DNA of 63,146 nucleotides, filler included, from Octopus bimaculoides (taxonomy: Eukaryota): assembly GCF_001194135.2 (NCBI RefSeq). It is 3 parts of 2 records of this genome, joined end to end, with 100 filler letters (N's around TTAATTAATTAA, not from the genome) between each part and the next. Parts side by side here need not be neighbours in the genome. Positions count along the whole stretch, not along the records: positions 1 to 30,583 come from NC_068982.1; 2 more parts are not named here. One strand, written 5' to 3'. Below, piece by piece: positions 1,442 through 30,583 of the stretch. Position numbers and translations under genes: made by a program. Position 1 is the stretch's first letter, and every line of letters begins with the position of its first letter. The notes beneath the pieces are model-generated. The model saw only the letters and a program-made list of their open reading frames with translations, did no database searches and had not been told where the DNA came from.

Positions 1442-2320
1442 TCAGTGCATACATGAACGTTTTGATAATGCCTTTCCAGTCTGACCTACATATAGTTCTT
1501 CACAATTTGGGCATTTAATGCAACAAATTAAATTTCTGCTTTTGTAGTTCATATTTGCATTTGTGAATATTTTTCTGGTTTTTGTGTTCATATATTGGTT
1601 GGTATTGCATTTAGATACAGTGAATGATTGGTCTTTGTTGCGAAGGTCATACTTTGCTTTGTTAATAATTTTTGGTAATAATTTTTTATTAAGAACCATA
1701 GCTTGATCTGTGATTATATCTTTTAATTCATTACTTTGAGCAATGATTGTTAGGTTTACTTTGGCAATGCTGAAGATATTCTGATGACATTGGTTGTGTG
1801 TCACTATAAATGGTATGACTTGTTCCCGTTTTCCTCTTCTTTGGATTGTTCTGTATTGTTGTATGGGTATTTCTATAACCTGCTTTATGCCATTTTCTAT
1901 AAGTAGAGATGGGTATTTTTGTTTGAGCAAAAATTCTCTTAGTTCTGTTAGGCATTTGTTTCTGATATTTGCATCTTCTACAATGGTAAAAATTCTTCTG
2001 GCTAGGCAGTATGGAATATTGCATTTTGCATGTGGGGGATGGCATGACTTAAAATTCATGTGTTTGTAGTATGCCTCTGTGGTAATGGTATTGTCCTTTT
2101 TAATTACCATTATATCTAGGAATGGTAATTTGGTACTACTCATCTCCTTTGTAAATTGGAGAAATTGGTGTAGGACATTCAGTAGGATATTGAACTCTTC
2201 CAGAGTTGGGAGCTTACTTTGACAATCATCTCCATTACCCATTACAAAGCCAAATATGATGCGATCAATGAGATGAAATATCAAAACTAATGACTGGCAA
2301 TAGAGCAGAAAAAAATGCAC
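1442..2320 (-). mobile_element. Penelope-like retroelement relic (RT thumb + GIY-YIG endonuclease)
   Basis: ORF contains LPFLDIMV, SCHPPH..NIPY.LARRI and a degenerate GIY-YIG segment NLICCIKCPNCEELYVGQTG..LSKR. The RT catalytic region is decayed. Confidence 0.85.
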
Positions 2321-2767: not shown

Positions 2768-3121
2768 NNNNNNNNNNNNNNNNNNNNNNNNNNNNNNNNN
2801 NNNNNNNNNNNNNNNNNNNNNNNNNNNNNNNNNNNNNNNNNNNNNNNNNNNNNNNNNNNNNNNNNNNNNNNNNNNNNNNNNNNNNNNNNNNNNNNNNNNN
2901 NNNNNNNNNNNNNNNNNNNNNNNNNNNNNNNNNNNNNNNNNNNNNNNNNNNNNNNNNNNNNNNNNNNNNNNNNNNNNNNNNNNNNNNNNNNNNNNNNNNN
3001 NNNNNNNNNNNNNNNNNNNNNNCATTACGTGGCACCTTGGGCAAATGTCTCTACTATAGCCTCAGGCCGACCAAAGCCTTGTGAGTGGATTTGGTAGACA
3101 GAAACTCAAAGAAGCCTGTCG

Positions 3122-3154
<33 letters not shown>

Positions 3155-3959
3155 ATACGTTTGTGTGTCTGTGTTTGTACCCTCAATATCGCTTGACAAC
3201 CGATAGTGGTGTGTGTGCACCCCTGTAATTTAGCATTTCGGCAAAAGAGACCGATAGAATAAGTGCTGGGCTTACAAAGAATAAGTCCTGGGGTCGATTT
3301 GCTCAACTAAAGGCGGTGCTCCAGCATGGCCACACTCAAATGACTGAAACAAGTAAAAGAGTAAAAGAGTAAAGAGTATATATATATATATATGCGCGCA
3401 CGCACGTGTGTATACACACACACACACACACAAATGCACACACATATGAGTGAACAAATGAAAAAGTAGCACTCAATACCTTTAGTAGGAGTTACATATA
3501 TTATTTAATAACAGTTTGATTTAGCTCCAAATAACTTCAAATTTCATGGGGATATATGACATGTCCATCTCATCAGAAGTTAGATGGTAGAGTCTGCTTC
3601 CTTATGGGGAACTAAGTCCAACCGTTGTTTAATGTGTGTGTATACATATATATATATACAGAGAGAGAGAGAGAGAGAGAGATAGATAGATAGATAAAGC
3701 TGCTCTATGGGATTACTCTGGGTTTCCCGTCCATAAGGTGCTTAGCTTTACAACATATCAAACCCCAAAACCTGTTAGCACAAGGCCTCTGTAGCAAGTG
3801 ACCTCTCTAGAAAATGGAGGAGGAAAAGATTTTGTTACTCTGTCAATGAAAGGGGATTGTCTCCCTTTGGCTGTTATTCATAACCGACTTTTTTATTGTG
3901 TCCCAAGATCCCAGGACATTAGCAGGAATTTTCTGGAAGTGCAAATAGGGTCTGAAGAC

Positions 3960-4075
3960 TTCCATTCTGAAGTTAAGAATGTTCCCTTGCCCATTCAGCT
4001 ATGCACAGTTTACAATGCTTGGTCTTGTTTATGTAGGGGCCTGGATTTTTTTAAGAATCTCCATGATATTACATG
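3960..4075 (-). mobile_element. Short Penelope-like C-terminal fragment
   Basis: Minus-strand PGPYINKTKHCKLCIAE resembles the PY...KRCNLC..EK terminus of PLE ORFs. Confidence 0.45.
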
Positions 4076-5062
4076 TTGAATTCCTTCATCCTTCAACTAC
4101 CATATATCCCCCGAACCCGCCCTGCCGTTTCCCGCCTCCCTTTTCCCCTCATCTACCATTCCACCAACCTACCCCTCCAACGCTCCATTCTCCGAGCTTT
4201 CCGGCGCCTCCAGTCCGATCTCTCCACCTCCCACATCTTCCCTAATCGACCCCTCCCCTCCTTCAAACGAGCCCATAACCTACAAGACCTCTTGGTCCAC
4301 AGCTTCTTCCCCAACCCAACCTCCCNNNNNNNNNNNNNNNNNNNNNNNNNNNNNNNNNNNNNNNNNNNNNNNNNNNNNNNNNNNNNNNNNNNNNNNNNNN
4401 NNNNNNNNNNNNNNNNNNNNNNNNNNNNNNNNNNNNNNNNNNNNNNNNNNNNNNNNNNNNNNNNNNNNNNNNNNNNNNNNNNNNNNNNNNNNNNNNNNNN
4501 NNNNNNNNNNNNNNNNNNNNNNNNNNNNNNNNNNNNNNNNNNNNNNNNNNNNNNNNNNNNNNNNNNNNNNNNNNNNNNNNNNNNNNNNNNNNNNNNNNNN
4601 NNNNNNNNNNNNNNNNNNNNNNNNNNNNNNNNNNNNNNNNNNNNNNNNNNNNNNNNNNNNNNNNNNNNNNNNNNNNNNNNNNNNNNNNNNNNNNNNNNNN
4701 NNNNNNNNNNNNNNNNNNNNNNNNNNNNNNNNNNNNNNNNNNNNNNNNNNNNNNNNNNNNNNNNNNNNNNNNNNNNNNNNNNNTCGCTCCTTTGTGCCAC
4801 ATGGGCTCAACTCCCCTCCCCTCTTCATCTAACCCCCCTCCCCCTGCCTCTCTCTAACTTCCGGTCAGCCATTACTATGATTGACCGTTGACTGAACACT
4901 ATTCAATTTTTTTTCTCCGTGTTTTTCTCCTTGTCTCCGTATTCTTTCTGTTGAAGAGCGTAGCTCGAAACGTTAAAGACTTTCCTGAGCGTCATACTAA
5001 TACATCCTTTTGTTGTTTACACCACCTGTCCTCATCTGTTGTTGTTTTTTAGTACATTCTCC
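4073..5062 (+). mobile_element. Younger Penelope-like element 3' portion with terminal repeat, interrupted by a gap
   Basis: RLPFPLIYHSTNLPLQRSILRAFRRLQSD...PLPSFKRAHNLQDLLVHS is a typical PLE linker region. The 3' part 4880-5060 is similar to 61685-61872 and ends at (TA)n. Confidence 0.7.
4943..4979 (+). ncRNA. Variant hammerhead-like motif in the Penelope terminal repeat
   Basis: TCTTT-CTGTTGAA-GAGC(GTA)GCTC-GAA-ACGT-T-AAAGA: stems I and II and a palindromic mini-stem III are present, but the core reads CUGUUGAA rather than CUGANGA. Confidence 0.45.
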
Positions 5063-5401
5063 CATATATATATATATATATATATATATGGTTTCCTTTT
5101 CGGGACACTCAGATTCATCAAGCAGGAATAATCACTGGGGTCAAGTAACTTTTTCTAACTCGTGTATCATTAACATTCCCTGTGGTTAGTCAACATTTAA
5201 AAATGATTTAAAAGGTAACACAGTAGTAAGCACTAGGATTACATATCCCTTTGAACCCATTTTTAGAAATATATATATATATATATACACATACAGGCGG
5301 ACAGACGATTATGAATGTTAGAATTCATAAATTCCGATAGTTTATGATTAAAATTTAGTGATCAGTTGAGTCACAGAAATAGCAATTAATAGTAGACTTA
5401 C

Positions 5402-5651
5402 CTCCAATGGTTGATTTTCTTCAGAAGCCAATACAATAATACTCGGTACACCAACAAATACAGCTCGTAGATTCCTGAGAAATCCTCCAATAAAAGGCAC
5501 TACTTTACAGTCTGGAATATCTAAGGACCTGTTGACTGCTTCCCGAAATTCTCTGCTTGGTTCAGCAGACAATAATAGCTCTGATAAGGATTGGAAACTC
5601 CTCCTTTCATTTTCACTCAAATTTAACCAAAATGGTTTCAGCTTATCAGAT
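5402..5651 (-). CDS. PLCE1: Phospholipase C-epsilon exon, RasGEF (CDC25) domain
   Basis: 250-nt exon with acceptor ttttaataaatttcag| and donor gag|gtaagt, phase 2 to 0. Translates (R/K)SDKLKPFWLNLSENERRSFQSLSELLLSAEPSREFREAVNRSLDIPDCKVVPFIGGFLRNLRAVFVGVPSIIVLASEENQPLE, matching the remembered human PLCE1 segment [28 protein letters not shown]...QEETLE. Confidence 0.88.
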
Positions 5652-9345: not shown

Positions 9346-10989
9346 TACATTACACTACACACACATGCATGCACACACACACACACACAAACATACAATA
9401 TAATATCTAATGCACATGCAGTTGCAAAGTTATTTTAACTAAGCACTTGATTAATTGAATCTAGCCTAATGCCTGGGGCTATGCAACAACCATAACTTTT
9501 ACTATCATCATCATCATGATTATATCCCTATTATCATTCTTACCTCCCCTTTCTTTCTTCCTTCATTATCATCTTCATTATCACTGTAGTACTTGTTATT
9601 TATTTATGTATTTATTTATTCATTCATTTTGATAATTTTGGTGTAGGTTGTACAGGTTTACAATACAGTATGTTTGTTTTTTTTCCTAGCTGAACCATAT
9701 ATAGCAAATCCTTCATTGGTTTCAACAATGAACATTCAGTTGTTTGATTAACTGAACTACCCACTTGTTATATCGAACATATAAGTGACTGAGTATTCTA
9801 CAGGCTTGTGAAACATTGATATTGCTTTCAAATTTTGGCACAAGGCCAGCAATTTTGGTGAAAGAGTTAAGTCAACTACATTGTCTCCAGTGCCTATTTT
9901 ATCGACCCTGAAAGGATGAAAGGCAAAATCAACCTTGGCAGAAATTGAACCCAGAACATAAAGACAGGTGAAATGTTACTAAGCATTGCACCCAGCATGC
10001 CAATGATTCTGCAAGTTCACTGTCTTATGTGTAATATTAATATTTCCATGCTGAATCAGTATGAGGTTATATGTATCAAGGCCAGACATTTGAACTACTG
10101 GTTGAATAAATCCACTGAAACTTCTTACAATTTCTCTCAACCCAAATTCACTCTCAAGACTTGGGTCATCTCAAGGTATCATTTTCCCAAGATACCTCCT
10201 TTTGAGATTGAAACTAGGGATCCATGATTGCAACGCAAACTTTTTAACCATTTGGCTTAGTCTGAATTTGAACTATGCATCACATGATCTATCTAGTTTA
10301 TTTCAATTCTTGTTTGACCATTGTCTATAACTGATCTTCATCAGCATTATTTTTAAATCCAGTTTTTCATGCTTGTACGAGGCAGATGTAACTTGCTGAG
10401 GTAGATTTTCTGTTGCCAGACATGTTTACGCAGAAGATTGGAAATGAAGGACACATCTTGGAATATGGTAACATCACATGATGTCAAAACAAGAACACAC
10501 ACACACACATACACATGCACAATGGTGACTATTGTGGTCAATCTGATATGTAGATGTATGTAATTACTGCTCATGTGAAAGCAACATACCAAGTATGAGA
10601 AAAATTGAGCTACAAAGTGCAATAAGATTACAAATGCTTATTTCTACATAAGTGTTTTAAATGTTACATGTATTGTATCATATCTGTATAAATAATACAT
10701 ACATCTTAACATTGTTATTTGAACATAGCATTGTAACATTACACACATAAAGAAATAAGCCAAGTGGCATTTCAAAACAAATTACAAAAATAAATAAATA
10801 AATAAATAAATAAACCCCCAAAAATAAACACCACTCAATATGTACATTTAAATACAATTGTGAAATTAAAAACAACCCAAAAGGAAAGATTACCAAACTG
10901 TGAACAACTTTAAATTTAATTCAGACAAAACTTTGTCAAAACTTTTAAAGAAGATAATTGTTTGCTTTGAAAAACAAAAGCAAATATCA

Positions 10990-13140
10990 GTGAATAGATA
11001 AAATCATCATGGCTAAACATATAAGACTCCTTCAACCAACTCATGACTACAATCACTGTATAGAATGGGCCTACAGTTTTAACAAAGATTTATATGAAGC
11101 ATATAATGTATAGTCTGACCCTCAAAAGTTCAGATTTATGCAAGGGCTAAAAACTTTGTGAAACTCCAAACACCCAGATTTAGATTTTTCTCTGAAACAT
11201 TTAAATGAACAAGCAAAACATATCACTAGATGTAAATTGAAACATCTAACAGAAGTGTTTGATTCAGAGCAAACTGGCACTATAAAACCAGCCATTGAAA
11301 TAATCATTCCACTTCAAATGAGGGATAGCTAGAACAGTCTGCTAAATCTGGTAGTAAACAACATACCAGCAGTTTAGCAGAAATTCATATCTGTATTGTA
11401 CAAGCAGAAGAATACCAAAAGCTTGTGGATGCCTTACAAGTGATCTGAAATGGTATGTTTCAACAGGTCCACAACCTTAATTTGAATGACAGGCCATACA
11501 ACACCACTATAAGTAAAGAACCCAGTAAATTAGAATTAGAGGCAGTAAGTGAAATTACAAACAAATATAAGATCACACAGTCCAGAGGTCTGAAAATACC
11601 CTACAAAACCATTAATCTTTCGATATATGTCTCACCTATTATATTACTAGTGTATCACAAAGAGCTAAAGCCACATGATTGAGATTCAAGCAGAAAGCCT
11701 GAACTAGCATGGGCACATAAACATAAAAATAAAATTTAATTCCTACAAAAAAATAAACCAAAGATTGTTTTAGTTATGAAATGTAATACAGAGAACAACT
11801 TCTCACAACATCAGGAGGACCTCAGAAAAAATACAAAGGCAATTTAGTGAACCAGGATTGAAAAACCTAAACTCCAAACTGCACCAGCTGAAACAACTCA
11901 CAGCTACAGCTGAAAAGCTAAAATATAAATCTACGGCATATGAATGACAGACCCAGACCTCATAACAGGTTACTAGCTGAAGAATTTCATCTTTTATATG
12001 TGTGATCTCTTATGGTTGTATAGAGAATGTATCAAAGGCACATAAAAACTTCCCCAATGAGTATGAAATGCAACTACTCTCCTCATCCCCCAAAACAGCT
12101 AAACCATCCTTGATGAAAATTATCACCCTATACCCTGCCAGAACCTCATATACAAATTATACACTGGGTACCTCAATCTGTTCTTGCAGGATCATTGTGC
12201 CAACTAAGAAAATGTAAGGCTGTATACATCAGCAACTGATTAATAAAATGCCCCGGGGAAAAAAACAGTAAAAGATTACAGAAATTTAACCAGTGTGGCT
12301 GGACTACCAGCAGGCTTTTGATAACATACCACATGGGTGGATTATCAAAGCTTTACAGTTAGCAAAATTCTCAGCAACTATTGAATACTTGACCAAGACA
12401 TGACACACAACTTTATTCCTCAGGAGTGATAAGGAGCAAATTGAGTCGGATAGCACTCACTACAAAAATGCATCTTTCAGAGTGATAGCCTGTTGGTATT
12501 GCTCTTCATTCTCTCATTAAATCCACTATCATACCTGCTCACAAAACATAGTGACCACAGAAATAGATCCAGAAGTATCTCTAATCTTTTTTTTGTTGAT
12601 GAACCGAAGCTGTATGGCTCAAATATCAACCACATAAAATAATAACTGGATCACATTACCCAATTTTCTACAAATATTGGAATGATTTGTGCATCATTAA
12701 CCTGCTAGAGGAGATGTCCTCTTGTGGTTAAAAAATTGCAGTAGAGTTCACTCAGATGGATAGCCATGCTAAAGTGGCTAGTGATATTACTTGTCACCTA
12801 CAGATAATGTTGACTATATTGAGAGTGATGGGTCAAAAGAATTTTGGTGGAACTTAGAAATTAAGACAGCCATCGAGTTAAAACATCGCCAATCAGACAT
12901 TGTTGTGTGAGACTACAAGGAAAAACTATGTTGTTATGGAAATCAGCTGCCCTCTGGATACTAATGTGATTAGAAAAATACAAGAGAAATAGGATATCTA
13001 CGGACCATTGATAAGGAGTTTGCAAATCCAGTACTCAACATATGCTTTCAGCTGCATACCTATTATTATTGGAGAGACAGGATGCATATCAACCAGTCTG
13101 GAGAAAAGTTTGGCTGAACTTCGGAATTTGGGGATGATGA
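10990..13140 (+). mobile_element. Decayed R4/Dong-like non-LTR retrotransposon
   Basis: Frame-broken motifs DYQQAFDNIPHGWIIKALQLAK, NPLSYLL, FVD(D)xKLYG and the RLE segment KHRQSDIVV...EISCPLDTNV..K..EK...Y..L...IPIIIGETG. Confidence 0.8.
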
Positions 13141-14715
13141 GACTAAACGAATAGTTGCAGATATGGCTGAGTGCTTAGGAAGCTTGCTCCCTAACTATGT
13201 GGTCTTGGGTTCAGTCACATTGCATGGTACCTTGGGCAAGTGTCATCTACTACAGCATCGGCCCAACCAAAACATTGTGAATGAATTTTGTAGGTGGAAA
13301 CTGAATGATGCCTGTCATACATATTTGTTTGTCTATCTATCTATCGATCAACACATATGCATGTGTGTGTGTGTGTGTGTGTGAGTGTGTGTTAGTGTGT
13401 GTACTATTGTCTTGACAACTCATGATGATTGTAAATGAGCATCACCATCATACAAGCAATGTTTTTCATTTCCAGTCTTTCATGTAAAACATGACCAAGA
13501 GGAAATAATAACTTGCTTGGAAACAGGTTAAGGTTGACAACAGGAAGGGCATTCAACCATAAGAAAAATCTACCTCAACAAATTCCATCCATTCATGTAA
13601 GTATGGATATTAAATGATTATGATGATAAATACCAACAGCTTGAATTACACCACTCTTAGAGAGCCTGCAAGGTCCATGAGTACTAACTTGCCCCCTTTG
13701 ATTTACTAGTAAAACAGCTACAAATATACTGTGTCTCTCTTTCTCTCTCTCTCTCTCTTTCTGCTGTTACTTATTCTATTATTGCATAACGTGAATAAAT
13801 CATCCATGCCTTGCCCAGTGATTTGTAGTTAGTCAGAAAAGCTAGTTTTGTTGTTGCCCCGTATGACAATTGTGCTATGGCATACTCCAGCCAATCAGGG
13901 CTGGGAATGTATGAATACTAGTCGCAGTTCTCTGTCTAAGCAGAGAAGTGGAGTTTTAATTTAGTTAGCGGAAAGACAATGGACCAGTAACATCTGTTTT
14001 TTATCATGGAACAGTCACTTTACTTTGCACACCAACTTCGTGTCTGCTAGCTTTGAATTATATCACATCTCAACTTGCAACATCAGGAACAGCCCTTTGT
14101 TTTCACATCAACTTCACGCAGCTAACTCTGAATTATAGCAGGTCTCGCCTTAGCATTAAAATCATATTTGAAATGTAAGTGTTAAAAGCCTTTTCCTGAC
14201 TCGCATACACACAGGCTACACATCTTATTACTTGTCAGCTCTTCTTAATTAAAAAGTATTTTCATTATAAAAATTGCCTTCTGATATTTTTCCTTTTACC
14301 AACTTTCACATAATAAATTAGACAACACCCTCACTAAACTGGTGACACTATAAATGGACTCTCTTAAATGCACTCACACTAAATTGGTGACCTTCTACAC
14401 TAGTGATTTTTTTTTACATTGATTACTTTCTACACTGGTGATCTTTTTACAAACTCAATATAGCAATAGTGGAGAGCTGCATATATGTCTGCTATTATTG
14501 TTGTTTAACCCTGAACCAGCCTGGACTGTATAGACTTATGATCAGAAGCATTCCTTCTTGACTGCGTTATCTTTTTTGTATATCATCAACTACATTGGAC
14601 CACGTCTTTCTTTCTTTGATGGAGAGTTTACTGTTATTTTCAACAGTTTCAGTAACCAAATAGAGGCTCTTTTGTTAGCTTGTACTCTTGTAGCTTACAC
14701 TTTTTTGCGACCATA

Positions 14716-15150
14716 GGTGCAGGAGCGGCTGTGTGGTAAGTAGCTTGCTTACCAACCACATAGTCCCAGGTTCATTCCCACTGCATTGCAGTTTGGGCAA
14801 GTGTTTTCTACTATAGCCTCAGGCCAACCAAAACCTTGTGGGTAGATTTCGTAGACGGAAACTGGAAGAAGCCCGTTGTATATGTGTGTGTATATATATA
14901 TATATATATGTATGTATATGTGTGTATATGCTTGTGTGTCTGTTTGTCCCTCCAGCATCGCTTGACAACCAATGCTGGTGTGTTTACATTCCCGTAACTT
15001 AGCGGTTTGGAAAAACAGACCGATAGAATAAGTACTAGGCTTACAAAGAATAAGCTCTGGGGTTGATTTGCTCGACTATAAAGGCGGTGCTCCAGTATGG
15101 CCGCAGACAAATGACTGAAACAAGTAATAGAGTAAAAGAGTGTAAGAGTA
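14716..15150 (+). mobile_element. tRNA-derived SINE family B, near full length
   Basis: Head gcaggagcggctgtgtggtaag...ggttca, TTGGGCAAGTG core, internal TA/TG microsatellite and (AAAAGAGT)-like tail. Other copies at about 3023-3373 (+), 13160-13330 (+), 18893-18990 (+), 21715-21880 (+), 26195-26340 (-) and 60960-61050 (-). Confidence 0.85.
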
Positions 15151-15635
15151 TATTTCTAATGAATCATACATTTTATTTAACTTTGAAAGTAATCAAGAAG
15201 TTGGAGGGAAAAGGTAAAACAACTGACTTTGCCTTTTGATACCAACCTGCCTGTAACTACCTCTGGTTCTGTAATGCAAACTTCCTATTTTAAAGGATCT
15301 AAATTAAAACTTTCTTTCAAAATTGATCTATGTTTAGAACACCTGTTTAATAATAGCTTTTAAATTTTGGCACAAGGCCAGTACTGTCAAGGTCAGTATT
15401 CAACTGGTACTTATTTTATTAACCCCGAAAGGATGAAAGGTTAGTCAACTTTGGTGGAATTTGAACTCAGAACATAAAGATGGATGAAATGCCAAGAAGC
15501 ATTTTGTCCAGTGTGCTAACAATTCTACCAACTCACCACCTTTAAAAGATGAACTACAACTCAGAATGTAAAGAGCCAGAAGCAATACCAGCAGCTACTT
15601 GGTCTGACAGTCAAACAATCCTATCTTTAATGATT

Positions 15636-21924: not shown

Positions 21925-22329
21925 GCACACACACACATACACACAATCATATCACTGAACATGTGTCTTCCATGCTGGCATAAGTTGGATGATTCATGAT
22001 TCAATAGGATTCAACAAGCCAGAGGATTGTATTAAACTCCAGTGTCTGCTTTGGGGAGCTTTCTATGTTTGAATGCTCTTTCTAATGCCATCAGTTTTAC
22101 AGAGTGTACTGGGTACTTTTTTCTTGGCAATGGCCTTTGTAAGATCAGCAAGGACAAAGTCCTCTGAGTAGAGGTTTCCTAGACAGGAAAGTGGTTTTAT
22201 GACAAGGTAGAAAAGCTTAAAGTAGGATAAAGAGAGACAACTATCTATTTATCTGATTGTTCATCCATCCATCTATCCATCCATCTACCCATTACTCCCG
22301 CCTCTCTCTCTCTCTCTTTCTCCAATATA

Positions 22330-22706
22330 TACACACACGCATATCTAATATATACACACACACATATCTAATATATACACACACATATCTAATATACACA
22401 CACACACATCTAATATACACACACACACATATCTAATATACACACACACACATATCTAATATACACACACACACACATATCTAATATACACACACACACA
22501 CATATCTAATATACACACACACACACATATCTAATATACACACACACATATCTAATATACACACACACATATCTAATATACACACACACACATATCTAAT
22601 ATACACACACACACATATCTAATATACACACACACATATCTAACATACACACACACATATCTAATACACACACACACATATCTAATACACACACACACAC
22701 ACACAC
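22330..22706. repeat. Minisatellite of about 20 bp, (CA)n-TATCTAATAT
   Basis: Well over a dozen tandem units of acacacatatctaatat with variable CA number. Confidence 0.9.
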
Positions 22707-22772
22707 GCTCATGAGCACATATGTGCAAAGCAATGTGGAGAAAATATAGTAAGTATATATATATATATATAT

Positions 22773-23058
22773 ATAAGCCAGCTGGAGGAGATGTCCTCCT
22801 GGGGCTAAAAGCAACAGTAACATCCACCACTAGGGGTCAGCCACACTTAAGTGGCAATATACTACACTTTATCGTGCAGTTACTGTTAATACTTCATTTA
22901 GAGAATTAACATTGCTTGTTTTCACCTTTTCAATATCAGTGAAGAATTTCACTGGAAAAGAAGATATAAGGTTTGCCAGGTTTTTGTCTCTCTCACCAAG
23001 GTCAGCAGCTGTCGAACGCCGATGAAGGGAAATAACCCTGAAATCCGGATACGTTCGT
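22773..23058 (+). mobile_element. Retrozyme-like / Penelope pLTR-like repeat, copy 1 (right end runs into a gap)
   Basis: About six differences by eye from the reverse complement of 30238-30583. Starts at a (TA)n tract, contains a hammerhead fold and several hairpins. Confidence 0.75.
23013..23057 (+). ncRNA. Type I hammerhead ribozyme
   Basis: CGAACG-CCGATGA-AGGG(AAATAA)CCCT-GAA-ATCCGGAT-A-CGTTCG: 6-bp stem I, core CCGANGA (U4C variant of CUGANGA), 4-bp stem II, GAAA, palindromic stem III, predicted cleavage after AUA at 23051. Confidence 0.82.
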
Positions 23059-23384
23059 NNNNNNNNNNNNNNNNNNNNNNNNNNNNNNNNNNNNNNNNNN
23101 NNNNNNNNNNNNNNNNNNNNNNNNNNNNNNNNNNNNNNNNNNNNNNNNNNNNNNNNNNNNNNNNNNNNNNNNNNNNNNNNNNNNNNNNNNNNNNNNNNNN
23201 NNNNNNNNNNNNNNNNNNNNNNNNNNNNNNNNNNNNNNNNNNNNNNNNNNNNNNNNNNNNNNNNNNNNNNNNNNNNNNNNNNNNNNNNNNNNNNNNNNNN
23301 NNNNNNTGTGCAAAGCAATGTGGAGAAAATATAGTAAGTATATATATATATATATATATAAATATACATGTACATATATTCTTT

Positions 23385-23599
23385 TATTCTTTTATTGTTT
23401 TACTTGTTTCAGTCATTTCACAGTGGCCATGCTGGAGCACTGCCTTTAGTCGAACAATTTGACTCCAGGACTTATTCTTTGTAAGCCTAGTACTTATTCT
23501 ATCGGTCTCTTTTGCCGAACTGCTAAGTTACAGGGATGTAAACACACTAGCATTGGTTGTCAAGTGATGGTGGGGGGACAAACACAGACACATATACAC

Positions 23600-23685
<86 letters not shown>

Positions 23686-24484: not shown

Positions 24485-25617
24485 TACCTGACATACCCTG
24501 TAATTCCCGGGAAAGTAGGGCTTATCCCTTGGAACCATTCTCATAATTGTTTTGCTAATCCAATAACAACAATACAAAGTATGTAGCCCTTAAAATGTTT
24601 TTCATGCATTTACAGAGAATACCAAACTGTCTTACAAAGGATCATGTTTTTAGAAATTCCCAATGAGTTATCAATACCCAAATTGTGATGTCAGTTATGT
24701 AATAACATGAAATTAGTTACCCGGTAGTAAGGATTCAAATAAAGTAGCCCCGAAAAGGGCTTTAATGTGTTCCCAGTGTATATAGAACGTAGGAGGAAAT
24801 ACTTGTAAGGCATGTATACTAAAATCGTGAAGCATGTAATGTAATAACAGGCTAATCAGATTTGAGATCATAACAATTCAAAGCAAATAACCCTGAAAAT
24901 GGCTTTTGTGCATTCCCAGAGAATATTACCCTCAGGGGCACTAGTGTTGGTATATACACACACACACACACACATATATATATGTGTGTGTGTGTATATG
25001 TTTGAGTGTCTGTGTTTGTCCCCCCCAACATTGCTTGACAATAGACACTGGTGTGTTTACGTCCCCGTAACCTAGCGGTTCAGCAAAAGAGACTAATAGA
25101 ATAAGTACTAGGCTTCTGAAGAATAAGTCCTGTGGTCGATTTGATCAACTAAAGGTGGTGCTCCAGCATGGCCACAGTCAAATGACTGAAACAAGTAAAA
25201 GAGTAAAAGAGTAAAAAAAGAGTAACCAAAATAAGTAGATCTATTGTTTAGGAAAATACAATTTACTTGTTTAAGGGTTGTACTGGATAAATTGCGAAAA
25301 TAACTAACAGTTTAAATACTAAAAAATGAGCATACTTAATTTCCTTTTTACTAAATAATTTAGGAAAATAAGTGGGTTATTTCCTTTGGCTATATATAAG
25401 GATCTCTTCCAGGGGCGAATGGGTTATTTCCCTTGGTTTTTAAAATAAAATATATTAGATATATATATATATATAAGGATCCCTTCCAGGATCCCTATCA
25501 TCGATTTTTTCAACAGCCTGAGTATACCATGCGGTTTCTAGACATGAGCTCTACTCATGTGTCAAGTTTCATTAAAATCGATAAAACAATGTAGGAGTTA
25601 GCTAACAACTCCATATA
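24482..25617 (+). mobile_element. Probable Helentron-type element carrying a SINE fragment (24985-25225)
   Basis: Start ACTACCTGACATACCCTGTAATTCCCGGG resembles the start at 15636; internal recurring ACCC/GGGAAATAACCC motifs; gtcaagtttcattaaaatcg near the end. Confidence 0.4.
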
Positions 25618-26122: not shown

Positions 26123-26178
<56 letters not shown>

Positions 26179-27849
26179 TGTATCTATATATATGACAGGT
26201 TTCTTTCAGTTTCTGTCTACCTAATCAACTCATATAGCTTTGGTTGGCCTTATTTTGTTGCAGAAAACACTTGCCCAAAGTGTCATGCACTGAACCTGGA
26301 ACCATGTGGCTGGAAACAAAGTTTCTTACCACACAGCCTATATATATATATATATATGAAAGCAGGAGTTAAATGGCAGGACTACCTAATTTTTTTTCAA
26401 CAGAGTAACTAAATAAATAACCATTCACACATATTTAGCAATCAATAGAATTGTAAATTCTTTTCACGTTTTTATAGTTCAATATTCACAATGGTTGGTT
26501 GAAATTTATATTGTTCGATTTCTTCTGTTTTATTTTTACTTACTTTTAGACTGTCAATAAGCAAAATTCTAAAATTTGTTTTGCTTAATGTAGATCAACT
26601 GGCTAGCACAGCCTGACCTCTATAAATAGAGTAGCAGTTTTGTTTCTTGTTCTTTCTTTAGTATCCTCTAAAGAAGCTTCATTCCAAATTTAGGCACCAA
26701 AAAATTGTGTGTAAGACCAGGAGTTACAATTGAAATATTTCATATATAGATACTGGGTATGAGATATGGATATTTGGTAGCAAGGGATATATATATTTCA
26801 CACAGTACATCATAGTCTTAACAAGATATTTTAAACCAAAACTGAGCAGTAGATGTTCATATATATTATGAAATATCATATATGTACTAAGTCTGTACAG
26901 TGAAAAAGTAAACAGAGAGAATCAACTTCCATTACATCATATAAAAGAAATATGTGTGACCTTACATCATAACAGATTTAAGCAACTACACTACCAGTTT
27001 CAAGAATTATGCCTTTTATCTGGCGGAGTATACAAAAGTAGAAAAAAGTAGAGATCCTCTCTGACCTTCAATATAAGGTCATCAGTCATGTGAGGTTAGA
27101 TGGCAAATCCAACTAGAATGGATGGATGTACTCAAAAAAGACAAGTGTTTTTATATGCAACTCATCAAAAATGCCTTTTGAAGAAAAGCTACAAAAAAAC
27201 GACTTTTGAGGAAAAGCTACAAAAAACGATTTAACAAAAAATAAAAACAAAATAATTTAACTTATTGTACAGTCCACATGGTAAATCATATTTGATTTTA
27301 GGTATTTCTTGCAGAAAGTGCTAAACATGTCTTCATGTTTGTGTTTGCATCTATCTATCTATCTAACTATCTATCTATCTATCTATCTCTCACACACACA
27401 CACACACACACACACCATCATCATTGTTTAATGTCTGCCTTCCATGCTGGCATGGGTATATATCATGAAATATGTGGAACTATGGCATTAAAGCTTATTG
27501 AATGAAAGAATGGAGTCAGCTCTGATATTGACATAAAGGAAATATGTGGGATCTTGCTTCGCAGTGGGTCTTTCATTGCAGAACATAGTTTCAAGAGAAC
27601 CTTTAAATATCATGTGCATACACTCATGCATATATATATGTATATTCAAATACCTGTATGTGTGTGTGTGTGTGTGCATGTATATATATATATATATATA
27701 AATATATAGATATGTGTGTGTGTGTATGTATGTATGTATACATATATATATATTTATACATATATATGTACATACATACATATGCATACATTATTTTATT
27801 TGTTTCAGCCTTGCAGCTGTGGCTGTAGTACTACTGTGGTACATATGTA

Positions 27850-28860: not shown

Positions 28861-29819
28861 TGGGAATTACTGTATGCAAAGTGGTAACATTGGTAGCTGG
28901 CAGCAAATTTGTAAAAGAGGGATGAGTGGAAATCTATTCTGATTTACTAAAAGCAGTTCAAACCAATGAAGACAGACTTTTTACTGATCTGATGACATGG
29001 GATGAAATGGGACCTTATTTTTATGATCTGAAAAAAAAAAAGTCTCAGTTCATAGAATGATGTCATACCTCTTCTCTAAGGCTTAAGGAGTTCAAGAGGT
29101 AGTATGGTGGTGACTGATGTTTTGAGATGAACAAGGAGTCAATTCTCCTTGATTTTCCAGTATGTGGCTGTTCTATGAACAGTGAATGAAGCATCGTAAC
29201 ATTCAAAGGGCTTAGAAAAACCAATTTAGCAGAAGAGATGAAGTAAGGTTTTAAAACAGATCAATGGTTACCATGACAATACATGACCATGCACATCTTT
29301 AGAAACAAGTCAAGCAATTGGCAAATTGGGTTGGTCAGTTGTCCCCCCACCAGTCACTACAACCCATATCTGGTACTCTCTGACTTCTAACTGATTGGGC
29401 CAATGAATGAGATCTGAGGGACAAGGCTATAGACAAAATGCAAATATTCTGAATCACCATTGTGATTGTCATTGTTGTTGTCATAGTCACCCACATTGTT
29501 GTAATCCTCTTCCTGCTGCTGCTCATCCTCGTCGTCTTCATCATCGTCATCATTGTCGTCGTCGCCGTCGTCGTCCTCCTCCTCCTCCTCCCCCTCCTCA
29601 TAATCGTCATCATCAGCATCATTTAACAATGATGTTGGGTATGATTTAGAATGTTTACATTGTGTCTACAGATTTTAGATTTCATTCCTGAAAGTTTATA
29701 TATATATATCTATATCTATCATTAACTATATATATCTATAAAATATATATATATGTATACATATACATATATGTATACATATACATAGATACATACATAC
29801 CTCTCTCTCTCTCTCTCTT

Positions 29820-30205
29820 TTTACTCTTGTACTTGTTTCAGTCATTTGACTGTGGCCATGCTGGAGCACCGCCTCTAGTCGAGCAAGTCGACCCCAGGAC
29901 TTATTCTTTGTAAACCTAGTACTTAGTCTATCAGTCTACTTTGCCAAACCGCTAAGTTATGGTGATGTAAACACACCAGCATCGGTTGTCAAGCAATGTT
30001 GGGGGGACAAACACACACACACACAAACACATACACACACATATATATATATATACATATATATGACGGGCTTCTTTCAGTTTCCGTCTACCAAATTCAC
30101 TCACAAGGCTTTGGTTAAAAACACTTGCCCAAGGTGCCATGCAGTGGGACTGAACCAAGAACCATGTGGTTCATAAGCAAGCTACTTACCACACAGCCAC
30201 TCCTA
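29820..30205 (-). mobile_element. SINE family B, near full length
   Basis: Reverse complement of the 14716-15150 family. Confidence 0.85.
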
Positions 30206-30237
30206 CACCAATATATATCCATATATATATATATATA

Positions 30238-30583
30238 GTGTAGTATATTGCCACTTAAGTGTGGCTGACCCCTAGGGGTGGATGTTACTGTTGCTTTTAG
30301 CCCCAGGAGGACATCTCCTCCAGCTGGCTTATCGACACACGACTGTGTCCTGTTTGTCAAGGGAGTTATCCCTCTCACCGCGACCAGCAGCACGAACGTA
30401 TCCGGATTTCAGGGTTATTTCCCTTCGTCGGCGTTCGACAGCTGATGACCTTGGTGAGAGAGACAAATCTGGCAAACCTTATATCTTCTTTTCCAGTGAC
30501 ATTCTTCACTGATATTGAAAAGGTGAAAACAAGCAATGTTAATTCTCTAAATGAAGTATTAACAGTAACTGCACGATAAAGTG
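30238..30583 (-). mobile_element. Retrozyme-like repeat, copy 2: one complete 343-bp monomer running into a scaffold join
   Basis: Reverse complement reads segments B-C-A whereas copy 1 reads A-B; the CAC at 30581-30583 recurs at 30238-30240, defining the unit length. The other end abuts (TA)n. Confidence 0.78.
30393..30437 (-). ncRNA. Type I hammerhead ribozyme, second copy
   Basis: Minus strand: CGAACG-CCGACGA-AGGG(AAATAA)CCCT-GAA-ATCCGGAT-A-CGTTCG. The only change from copy 1 within the motif is at the variable core position N7. Confidence 0.82.

What the first reader, a model, noticed from the sequence alone, without database searches (positions are those of the whole stretch)
23013..23057. 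Type I hammerhead ribozyme in a cephalopod repeat
Seen: perfect stem I CGAACG/CGTTCG, core CCGATGA, stem II AGGG/CCCT with loop AAATAA, GAAA, stem III ATCCGGAT and NUH = AUA. The copy at 30393-30437 differs within the motif only at the tolerant N7 position. Known: type I hammerheads with short palindromic stem III occur in Penelope-like elements and animal retrozymes and cleave as dimers. Inference: this is a self-cleaving RNA with two unusual features, U4C and an A-U first pair in stem II. I do not know of a description of this family in octopus but cannot check.
Basis: partly seen in the sequence, partly recalled or inferred. Interest (0 to 1): 0.9.

Follow-up and report, generated by a model that had tools for sequence, protein, structure and literature searches.

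The report
Octopus retroelement carrying a variant hammerhead
The motif is real and sits in a 343-base non-coding mobile repeat of an octopus genome of the known Penelope/"retrozyme" kind, so it is a new example of a familiar class with an off-consensus core whose self-cleavage remains untested.

Summary
The 45-nt motif is at 23013-23057 (+). It fits a type I hammerhead: 6-bp helix I, 4-bp helix II with a 6-nt loop, GAAA, an 8-nt palindromic helix III and an AUA cleavage triplet. Two features are off-consensus: C at position 4, and A-U at 10.1/11.1. No shuffle of the window reproduces it (0 of 400). Rfam does not report it.

The motif lies on the sense strand of a 343-nt, ORF-free, 45% GC, strongly self-paired unit. 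The unit occurs head-to-tail, ends at a fixed 3' terminus in (TA)n, and has older 5'-truncated and head-to-head relatives in the window and in Octopus sinensis. The left flank of copy A reappears after the assembly gap without the element. These are the hallmarks of Penelope-like-element-dependent retroelements (animal non-LTR retrozymes).

A second, unrelated O. sinensis element carries a canonical-core hammerhead of the same architecture. Cofolding gives a double hammerhead, whereas the monomer is trapped in an inactive fold.

Self-cleavage is untested. U4C has a natural viroid precedent with reduced activity in vitro. Verdict: a new member of a known kind, of moderate-to-low interest.

The parts
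22775..23058 (+). Copy A of the repeat. It begins with a 5'-truncated partial unit (about 22775/22777-22867, equal to unit positions ~251-343) joined head-to-tail to the start of a full unit (22868-23058, unit positions 1-189). It is then cut by the assembly gap.
   Evidence: Alignment with copy B and blastn of the unit against the window. The left boundary follows (TA)10 and is ambiguous by 2 nt.
22988..23058 (+). Extended hammerhead hairpin of copy A. It comprises the outer helix I strand CTCTCTCACC (22988-22997), the middle helix I strand CAGCAGC (23003-23009), the internal loop TGT, and then the 45-nt motif. The 3' partner strands lie in the gap.
   Evidence: Coordinates; pairing inferred from the complete copy B.
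23013..23057 (+). Hammerhead motif, copy A: helix I CGAACG/CGTTCG, core CCGATGA (C at position 4), helix II AGGG/CCCT with loop AAATAA, GAAA, helix III palindrome ATCCGGAT, H17 = A. The predicted cleavage is between 23051 and 23052.
23059..23306 (.). Assembly gap (248 N) that hides the rest of copy A.
23307..23361 (+). A 55 nt stretch identical to 22722-22776 (the left flank of copy A including (TA)10AA), followed by sequence without the element. It is either an empty-site allele scaffolded after the filled allele or a target-site duplication of at least 55 bp.
30238..30583 (-). Copy B: one complete 343-nt unit (30580 down to 30238 on the minus strand), preceded by 3 nt (CAC) that match the end of a previous unit at the piece's edge. 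Its 3' terminus ...CTACAC abuts (TA)n at 30237.
30370..30462 (-). Complete extended hammerhead hairpin of copy B. Outer helix I is CUCUCUCACC (30462-30453) paired with GGUGAGAGGG (30379-30370). Middle helix I is CAUCAGC (30447-30441) paired with GCUGCUG (30391-30385), with one mismatch. An internal loop UGU/U follows, then the inner 6-bp helix I.
   Evidence: Fold of 30355-30475(-): -48.9 kcal/mol, z = -4.6; coordinates.
30393..30437 (-). Hammerhead motif, copy B (core CCGACGA, N7 = C). The predicted cleavage is between 30399 and 30398, read on the minus strand.
12670..12790 (+). An old, diverged (about 68% identical) fragment homologous to unit positions 224-341, the 3' module only. It has no hammerhead.
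1442..2320 (-). A degraded Penelope-like element ORF (RT C-terminal part, linker and the start of GIY-YIG). It shows that candidate autonomous partner elements exist in this genome. It is not physically linked to the unit.
   Evidence: Relatives carry PF00078, PF26215 and PF01541.

Best explanation
The motif is a genuine type I hammerhead by descent and architecture. It is carried on the sense strand of a 343-nt non-coding retroelement of an octopus genome that is mobilised by Penelope-like-element (PLE) machinery, and it is best filed with the animal 'non-LTR retrozymes'. What is shown: the unit is joined head-to-tail, has a fixed 3' end inserted in (TA)n, and has 5'-truncated and inverted relatives. 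The hammerhead has the canonical metazoan layout, with a helix III too weak to hold the monomer in the active fold. What is inferred: transcripts spanning two or more units pair their AUCCGGAU palindromes into a double hammerhead and cleave after A17. [quoted passage not shown] A PLE reverse transcriptase/GIY-YIG endonuclease then copies the RNA into (TA)n sites by target-primed reverse transcription. C4 and the A10.1-U11.1 pair probably slow cleavage and, by stabilising an inactive monomer fold, confine it to multimeric RNA. They are not expected to abolish it.
For: Motif and topology. Chance expectation: 0.003 per piece, and 0 of 400 shuffles with a palindromic helix III. Architecture: it matches the stated canonical metazoan type I layout of helix I 6 bp, helix II 4 bp and helix III 1-2 bp with a small palindromic loop (PMC4209133). 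Stem I continues through a UGU/U internal loop into about 17 more base pairs (z = -4.6). Unit properties: 343 nt, 45% GC, no ORF, MFE -118.6 kcal/mol, z = -5.6. This is within the 170-400 nt, below 50% GC, highly self-paired range given for animal retrozymes (PMC7229834). Head-to-tail junction: CTACAC|TTTATCG in copy A. Insertion hallmarks: the 3' terminus CTACAC abuts (TA)n in copy B, and the homologous terminus of a diverged O. sinensis copy (L006, z = 7.2, 0 of 300 shuffles) also abuts a TA tract. Diverged 3'-module fragments occur in the window (12670-12790) and as a head-to-head pair between (TA)n tracts in L007. Craig et al. 2021 describe this combination of (TA)n targets, partial tandems, inverted copies and assembly breaks for PLEs. 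Insertion event: the left flank of copy A is repeated after the gap without the element. Strand: the hammerhead is on the strand whose 3' end is fixed, that is, the RNA-intermediate strand. Partner elements: PLE ORFs exist in the window and in O. sinensis. Independent family: an unrelated O. sinensis element (L007 10703-10762) has a canonical CUGAUGA hammerhead that shares the A10.1-U11.1 pair, an 8-nt palindromic helix III, a UA/CG cleavage site and about 165 nt from cleavage site to a 3' end at (TA)n (0 of 400 shuffles). Dimer: RNAcofold's MFE dimer is the double hammerhead (-32.5 kcal/mol against 2 x -15.1), whereas the monomer's hammerhead fold is only -6.0 kcal/mol. Core variant: a natural U4C variant keeps enough activity in vivo for viroid infectivity (PMC3088659). 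Both copies share C4 at 97.6% identity, so C4 was present in their common source rather than arising after insertion.
Against: No cleavage data exist. U4 is a conserved core position, and U4C 'considerably decreases activity in vitro'. G10.1-C11.1 is also replaced. Rfam release 15 gives no hammerhead hit at gathering score or at E<=10; however, it also misses the canonical-core L007 motif. Only two near-identical copies carry the motif, so there is no covariation or purifying-selection evidence. Two consecutive hammerheads are never seen in one array here, because copy A is cut by the gap and copy B by the piece's edge. All older relatives lack the hammerhead region. No PLE ORF is linked to the unit. 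PLE clades without hammerheads proliferate well, so mobility does not prove ribozyme function.
Confidence: 0.55

Rival explanations
1. This is the same retroelement, but the hammerhead is a catalytically dead relic. On this reading C4 and A10.1-U11.1 inactivate it, and the element is copied by PLE machinery without any self-cleavage or circular RNA stage. The long hairpin, rather than catalysis, would be what matters, for example for RT recognition.
For: U4C lowers activity considerably in vitro. PLE hammerheads generally cleave very poorly in vitro even as dimers. [quoted passage not shown] The monomer is predicted to be trapped in a non-hammerhead fold that C4 stabilises by 2.2 kcal/mol. Rfam reports no hit.
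Against: Every other core nucleotide, all three helices, the 8-nt palindrome and a stem I internal loop opposite a 6-nt loop 2 are intact in both copies. The only difference inside the motif is at the free N7 position. U4C is functional in vivo in a viroid. The family looks recently active, with 2.4% divergence and a possible empty-site allele.
Confidence: 0.3
2. The unit is not an independent non-autonomous retrozyme. Instead it is the terminal repeat (pseudo-LTR) or a solo or internally deleted remnant of a full-length autonomous Penelope-like element, whose ORF-bearing copies lie elsewhere in the genome.
For: PLE hammerheads lie in pLTRs near the 3' end, and most PLE insertions are 5'-truncated and contain only the terminal repeat. 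A 2026 preprint argues that animal retrozymes derive from PLE pLTRs. Copy B is cut by the piece's edge after only 3 nt of upstream sequence.
Against: In copy A the 3' terminus CTACAC is joined directly to TTTATCG, and only 343 nt later copy B reaches the same 3' terminus, so a complete unit has no room for an ORF. The unit shows no similarity to the PLE remnants in the window or in L006/L007, apart from separate insertions. The hammerhead is of the 'canonical' type with loops for tertiary contacts, not the minimal PLE type.
Confidence: 0.2
3. This is a chance hammerhead-like arrangement inside a long hairpin of an unrelated repeat, with no evolutionary link to hammerheads.
For: The descriptor had to be relaxed at position 4. 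At about 0.003 chance hits per 29 kb, a genome of a few gigabases would hold a few hundred such matches. Relaxed descriptors do give poor hits in unrelated PLE loci. Rfam reports no hit.
Against: Requiring the palindromic helix III gives 0 of 400 shuffles. The motif lies on the sense strand of an element with exactly the insertion hallmarks of the one retroelement class known to carry such hammerheads. A second octopus element has the same architecture with a canonical core. The dimer cofold reproduces the double hammerhead.
Confidence: 0.07

Closest known systems
Animal non-LTR retrozymes (Cervera & de la Pena 2020, PMC7229834), including newt/axolotl satellite 2 (330-350 bp) and Schistosoma Sm-alpha
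   Same: A short (170-400 nt), ORF-free, low-GC, highly self-paired unit arranged head-to-tail. There is one type I hammerhead per unit, with 6-bp helix I, 4-bp helix II, and a 2-bp helix III capped by a palindromic tetraloop, as in axolotl HHR_Amex2. Action is predicted to be dimeric. It coexists with PLEs in the same genome.
   Different: Only about 1.3 units are visible per locus here, not long arrays. The core has C4 instead of U4, and A-U instead of G-C at 10.1/11.1. Insertion into (TA)n with a fixed 3' end is explicit here. No expression or circular RNA data exist. No cephalopod example was found in the searchable literature.
Hammerheads in pseudo-LTRs of Penelope-like elements (Cervera & de la Pena 2014, PMC4209133; Lunse et al. 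2017; Craig et al. 2021, PMC8557442)
   Same: Type I topology, a palindromic and very short helix III, and expected dimer dependence. The host element shows (TA)n targeting, partial tandems, inverted head-to-head copies, 5' truncation and assembly breaks.
   Different: PLE hammerheads are mostly 'minimal', with no helix III insert, a long helix II, a short helix I and no loop-loop contacts, and they flank an RT/GIY-YIG ORF. Here helix I, helix II and the loops are of the canonical type, and the 343-nt unit has no ORF.
Natural U4C hammerhead of a viroid (Ambros & Flores 1998, as cited in Perreault et al. 2011, PMC3088659)
   Same: The same core substitution (U4 to C) occurs in a natural, replicating RNA. 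It is reported to reduce cleavage in vitro while remaining sufficient in vivo.
   Different: That case is a plant viroid hammerhead in an RNA replicon, not a genomic animal retroelement. The primary paper could not be read here.
Octopus sinensis element at L007 10430-10925
   Same: Type I hammerhead with an A10.1-U11.1 pair, an 8-nt palindromic helix III (ACUGCAGU), a UA/CG cleavage site, about 165 nt from the cleavage site to a 3' end abutting (TA)n, and an inverted partial copy next to it.
   Different: It has a canonical CUGAUGA core and a long two-part helix II (31 nt). It shows no detectable sequence homology to the 343-nt unit outside the motif (z = -0.3).

Membership tests
Hammerhead ribozyme, type I | Conserved core 5' strand C3-U4-G5-A6-N7-G8-A9 | tested here: inconclusive
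   C3, G5, A6, G8 and A9 are present in both copies, but position 4 is C, not U. U4C is a documented natural variant with reduced in vitro activity, so the deviation neither excludes nor confirms membership.
Hammerhead ribozyme, type I | G12-A13-A14, the A15.1-U16.1 pair, and H17 (not G) before the scissile bond | tested here: met
   GAAA, then U16.1 and A17, are in the right register in both copies.
Hammerhead ribozyme, type I | Three helices around the core, with helix I open and helices II and III closed | tested here: met
   Helix I is 6 bp and extends through an internal loop. Helix II is 4 bp with a 6-nt loop. Helix III is 2 bp with a CCGG loop, or 8 bp in the dimer.
Hammerhead ribozyme, type I | G10.1-C11.1 closing pair of helix II (highly conserved, not invariant) | tested here: not met
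   The pair is A-U in both copies. The same A-U pair occurs in the canonical-core octopus motif in L007. Axolotl HHR_Amex2 has a U-U at the base of helix II yet is active as a dimer.
Hammerhead ribozyme, type I | Score at or above the gathering threshold of the Rfam hammerhead models | tested here: not met
   There is no hit at gathering score or at E<=10. The control is weak, because the canonical-core L007 motif is also missed.
Hammerhead ribozyme, type I | Covariation or conservation of stems and core among diverged homologues | tested here: inconclusive
   Only two copies carry the motif, at 97.6% identity, with a single difference at N7. Older relatives cover only the 3' module. No further copies could be reached.
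Hammerhead ribozyme, type I | Site-specific self-cleavage giving 2',3'-cyclic phosphate and 5'-OH ends | not testable with these tools
   This needs in vitro transcription or RNA end mapping.
Animal non-LTR retrozyme | Head-to-tail repeats of 150-450 bp, each unit with a type I hammerhead (two or more consecutive hammerheads) | tested here: inconclusive
   A head-to-tail junction is seen in copy A, and 3 nt of a previous unit in copy B. The gap (23059-23306) and the piece's edge hide whether two hammerheads are consecutive.
Animal non-LTR retrozyme | No ORF, no LTR/PBS/PPT, GC below 50%, and a highly self-paired RNA | tested here: met
   The longest open stretch across a trimer is 92 codons, with 15-18 stops in every frame. 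GC is 45%. MFE is -118.6 kcal/mol with z = -5.6.
Animal non-LTR retrozyme | Expressed as linear and circular RNA of unit length | not testable with these tools
   No transcriptome data are available here.
Penelope-like element pLTR hammerhead | The hammerhead lies in terminal repeats flanking an RT plus GIY-YIG ORF | tested here: not met
   There is no ORF within or next to the unit. The nearest PLE ORF remnant is about 20 kb away and unrelated in sequence.
Penelope-like element pLTR hammerhead | PLE-type insertion hallmarks: microsatellite (TA)n target, 5' truncation, partial tandems, inverted copies | tested here: met
   compared with the description in PMC8557442.

The most novel reading that the evidence does not exclude
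The C4 hammerhead is not a defect but a built-in switch of a currently active octopus retrozyme. C4 lets core C3-C4-G5 pair with the CGG of the helix III palindrome, which locks monomeric or circular RNA in an uncleavable fold. Only multimeric transcripts, through the 8-bp intermolecular helix III, form the active double hammerhead. If so, octopus tissues would hold abundant 343-nt circular RNAs protected from re-cleavage. That would answer, for one family, the open question of how retrozyme circles escape their own ribozyme.
Probability: 0.15. Interest if true: 0.55.

Novelty: new member of a known kind. Interest (0 to 1): 0.3.

Why it matters
If the ribozyme is active, this adds cephalopods to the animals with retrozyme-type self-cleaving repeats. 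It would also provide a natural U4C core in an animal genome, in an element that looks recently mobile and may be polymorphic at this locus. That makes it a convenient natural test of how much core deviation the full-length, dimer-forming hammerhead tolerates, and of how such RNAs avoid self-cleavage once circular. If it is inactive, it shows that relaxed hammerhead descriptors pick up relics in PLE-derived repeats. In either case it does not change the current picture of hammerheads in animal retroelements.

Tried and rejected
1. Rfam at gathering score on the whole piece, and at E<=10 on both copies, gave no hammerhead, only weak miRNA-like hairpin hits. I did not take this as refutation, because the canonical-core octopus motif in L007 is also missed.

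2. An exact 20-mer (helix II, loop 2 and GAAA) was scanned against metagenome contigs and viral contigs. It gave 5 and 0 hits. None of the 5 has a hammerhead core or helix I around it, so they are chance matches.

3. A protein-database search with the 92-codon open stretch of the unit, hoping for spurious ORFs on cephalopod contigs, found no candidates.

4. A search with the RasGEF-like exon, to fetch the orthologous locus for an empty-site test, returned only about 63%-identical fragments on short contigs and no octopus orthologue.

5. PLE relatives on long ENA contigs (L008-L010) are not octopus. They contain no copy of the unit and only poor relaxed-descriptor hits.

6. I considered that copies A and B might be the two pLTRs of one PLE. 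I rejected this because they are convergent, B's 3' end abuts (TA)n at 30238, and the 7 kb between them holds SINE-like repeats and microsatellites but no RT/EN ORF.

7. I considered sequence homology between the unit and the L007 hammerhead element. I rejected it (z = -0.3).

8. Lunse et al. 2017 and Ambros & Flores 1998 could not be read.

Full report
**Observation**

The second copy at 30393-30437 is the reverse complement, so it lies on the minus strand. It differs only at N7, with C instead of U. Copy A ends one base before an assembly gap (N 23059-23306).

A type I hammerhead descriptor that I wrote finds only these two hits in the piece on either strand, and no canonical-core hit. The descriptor requires the core CNGANGA, helix II, GAAA, U16.1, H17 and helix I. 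Dinucleotide-preserving shuffles give these expectations:
- 0.063 hits per piece for the relaxed descriptor
- 0.003 at the observed stem lengths
- 0 in 400 shuffles when helix III must be a perfect palindrome

The rate of 0.003 per 29 kb would still mean a few hundred chance matches in a multi-gigabase genome, so context has to carry the argument.

**Anatomy of the repeat**

I aligned copy A with the reverse complement of copy B. Copy A starts right after (TA)10 with AAGCCAGC...CTACAC (about 93 nt) and continues TTTATCG...hammerhead into the gap. Copy B starts at the piece's edge with CAC|TTTATCG..., runs through the hammerhead and 59 further nt, and then through the same AAGCCAGC...CTACAC segment. 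It stops at (TA)n, with its last base at 30238.

The two copies therefore define one unit of 343 nt (TTTATCG...CTACAC), joined head-to-tail in copy A. The unit has these properties:
- 45% GC
- stops in every frame, with the longest open stretch 92 codons
- a stable fold, at -118.6 kcal/mol and z = -5.6

The hammerhead sits at the tip of a long imperfect hairpin. Its inner helix I of 6 bp is followed by a UGU/U internal loop, then 7 bp, a second loop and about 10 bp. This local fold has an energy of -48.9 kcal/mol with z = -4.6. Predicted cleavage is after unit position 182, which is 161 nt from the 3' end. Copies A and B differ at 7 of 286 aligned positions.

**Evidence that the unit is a mobile element of the Penelope type**

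1. The 3' terminus ...CTACAC abuts (TA)n in copy B. A diverged 5'-truncated relative in O. sinensis (L006, minus strand, about 10965-11117) aligns to unit positions 203-342. It ends at the same terminus beside a TA tract (z = 7.2, 0 of 300 shuffles).
2. Further diverged fragments cover only the 3' module. One is in the window at 12670-12790. A head-to-head inverted pair lies in L007 at about 3600-3990, with both 3' ends facing (TA)n tracts.
3. The 55 nt after the gap (23307-23361) are identical to the 55 nt that lead into copy A (22722-22776). After them the sequence continues without the element. This is either an empty-site allele scaffolded behind the filled allele, meaning a heterozygous and hence recent insertion, or a target-site duplication of at least 55 bp. 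Either reading marks copy A as a discrete insertion.
4. The hammerhead is on the strand whose 3' end is fixed and whose 5' end is truncated. That is the strand of the presumed RNA intermediate.
5. Craig et al. 2021 list these traits for Penelope-like elements: (TA)n as preferred target, partial tandems forming pseudo-LTRs, adjacent inverted 5'-truncated copies, hammerheads near the 3' end, and resulting assembly problems (PMC8557442).
6. The window contains a degraded PLE ORF at 1442-2320 (-). Its best match is an O. sinensis protein at 67% identity, and its relatives carry RVT_1 and GIY-YIG domains. This also identifies the window as octopus DNA.

The unit shows no sequence similarity to these PLE remnants.

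**Comparison with known hammerhead-bearing elements**

Cervera & de la Pena 2014 define the canonical metazoan type I hammerhead as having helix I of 6 bp, helix II of 4 bp, loops that interact, and helix III of 1-2 bp capped by a 2-4 nt palindromic loop. They state that this makes the monomer inefficient and the tandem dimer active (PMC4209133). The window motif fits point by point.

Cervera & de la Pena 2020 describe animal non-LTR retrozymes as tandem repeats of about 170-400 nt and below 50% GC. They lack an ORF, LTR, PBS and PPT, and are highly self-paired. They were studied in a coral, a mussel and the axolotl, and coexist with PLEs, which are the proposed mobilisers (PMC7229834). A 2026 preprint derives vertebrate retrozymes from PLE pseudo-LTRs.

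No paper in the library links hammerheads to octopus specifically. The giant squid genome paper does list 235 Rfam hammerhead-1 loci (PMC6962438), so type I hammerheads in cephalopods are already on record.

**A second octopus hammerhead**

In only 37.5 kb of O. sinensis DNA, fetched for other reasons, the descriptor found CTACG-CTGATGA-AGCTA...TAGCT-GAAA-CTGCAG-TA-CGTAG at L007 10703-10762. It shares these features with the window motif:
- a canonical core, unlike the window motif
- the same A10.1-U11.1 pair
- an 8-nt palindromic helix III
- the same UA/CG cleavage context
- about 165 nt from the cleavage site to an element end at (TA)n
- an inverted partial copy next to it

No shuffle reproduces it (0 of 400). 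It is not homologous to the 343-nt unit outside the motif. This suggests that hammerheads of this design are common in octopus genomes and that the A-U pair at 10.1/11.1 is a lineage trait rather than damage.

**The core deviation and the fold**

Perreault et al. 2011 state that core variants are rare. They also say that the natural U4C variant of a viroid, although considerably less active in vitro, keeps enough activity in vivo for infectivity (PMC3088659; their reference 30). So C4 lowers but does not exclude activity.

For the 45-mer alone, the hammerhead fold is worth only -6.0 kcal/mol against an MFE of -15.1. In that MFE fold C3-C4-G5 pair with the CGG of helix III, and with U4 the trap would be 2.2 kcal/mol weaker. 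The MFE of two strands is exactly the double hammerhead, with an 8-bp intermolecular helix III, at -32.5 kcal/mol.

Rfam gives no hammerhead hit for either copy, even at E<=10. It also misses the canonical-core L007 motif, so this negative result weighs little.

**What could not be done**

No further motif-bearing copies could be reached. DNA scans of the metagenome and viral collections gave only chance 20-mer hits. Protein-route searches failed. Other PLE loci were from non-octopus organisms. Conservation and covariation therefore remain untested, as do array length, expression, circular RNA and cleavage.

**Verdict**

The most likely reading (0.55) is a genuine, probably attenuated and dimer-dependent, type I hammerhead in a PLE-mobilised, retrozyme-like 343-nt element of octopus.

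The main rival (0.3) is the same element with a dead ribozyme relic. A chance motif is unlikely (about 0.07). Whether the unit is an independent non-autonomous element or a derivative of a full PLE's terminal repeat is a classification question that a genome-wide census would settle.

This is a new member of a known kind. The C4 core in a seemingly young element is its only mildly unusual feature. Interest is 0.3.

Noticed in passing
window 22722-22776 and 23307-23361: A 55-nt exact duplication of copy A's left flank appears on the far side of the assembly gap, followed by sequence lacking the element. It is probably two alleles (filled and empty) scaffolded in series, or else a long target-site duplication.
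   Followed up: partly
window 1442-2320 (-) and 3798-4325 (+): A degraded Penelope-like ORF, 67% identical to O. sinensis LOC115230173, whose relatives have RT and GIY-YIG domains. A second stretch on the opposite strand (4073-4325) looks by eye like a PLE RT-EN linker and runs into gap 4326-4783. Together they look like inverted PLE remnants around assembly gaps.
   Followed up: partly
window 5348-5620 (-): An open stretch with a weak RasGEF-domain match (E about 1e-3, below Pfam's cut-off). It is about 63% identical to fragments on short public contigs and is possibly an exon of a host gene.
   Followed up: partly
window 3050-3373, 14713-15153, 23379-23604, 25021-25219, 26123-26292, 29819-30212: A SINE-like repeat of about 200-300 nt, present in at least six copies in both orientations at 72-87% identity. 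It is also present in the O. sinensis loci L006 and L007.
   Followed up: no
window 22264-22765: A minisatellite with a period of about 22-23 nt (CTAATATACACACACACACATAT-like), immediately left of the (TA)n tract that received copy A.
   Followed up: no
L007 10703-10762 (+), element about 10430-10925: A canonical-core type I hammerhead motif in O. sinensis with an A10.1-U11.1 pair and the helix III palindrome ACUGCAGU. Its cleavage site is about 165 nt upstream of a 3' end at (TA)n. The first 93 nt of the element recur inverted at 10308-10402. Rfam does not report it.
   Followed up: partly
L007 about 3600-3990; L006 about 10965-11117 (-); window 12670-12790 (+): Diverged 5'-truncated relatives of the unit's 3' module. 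The L007 pair is head-to-head between (TA)n tracts. All four fragments are shorter than the 161 nt that lie downstream of the predicted cleavage site. This could reflect copying of self-cleaved RNA, but it is not statistically convincing (p about 0.05 under uniform truncation, and there is detection bias).
   Followed up: partly
L008 9037-11179 and L010 8390-10855: Head-to-head inverted pairs of PLE ORFs (HTH_animal plus GIY-YIG) on long contigs of ENA assemblies ERZ25073285 and ERZ25073280, from an unidentified non-octopus eukaryote.
   Followed up: no
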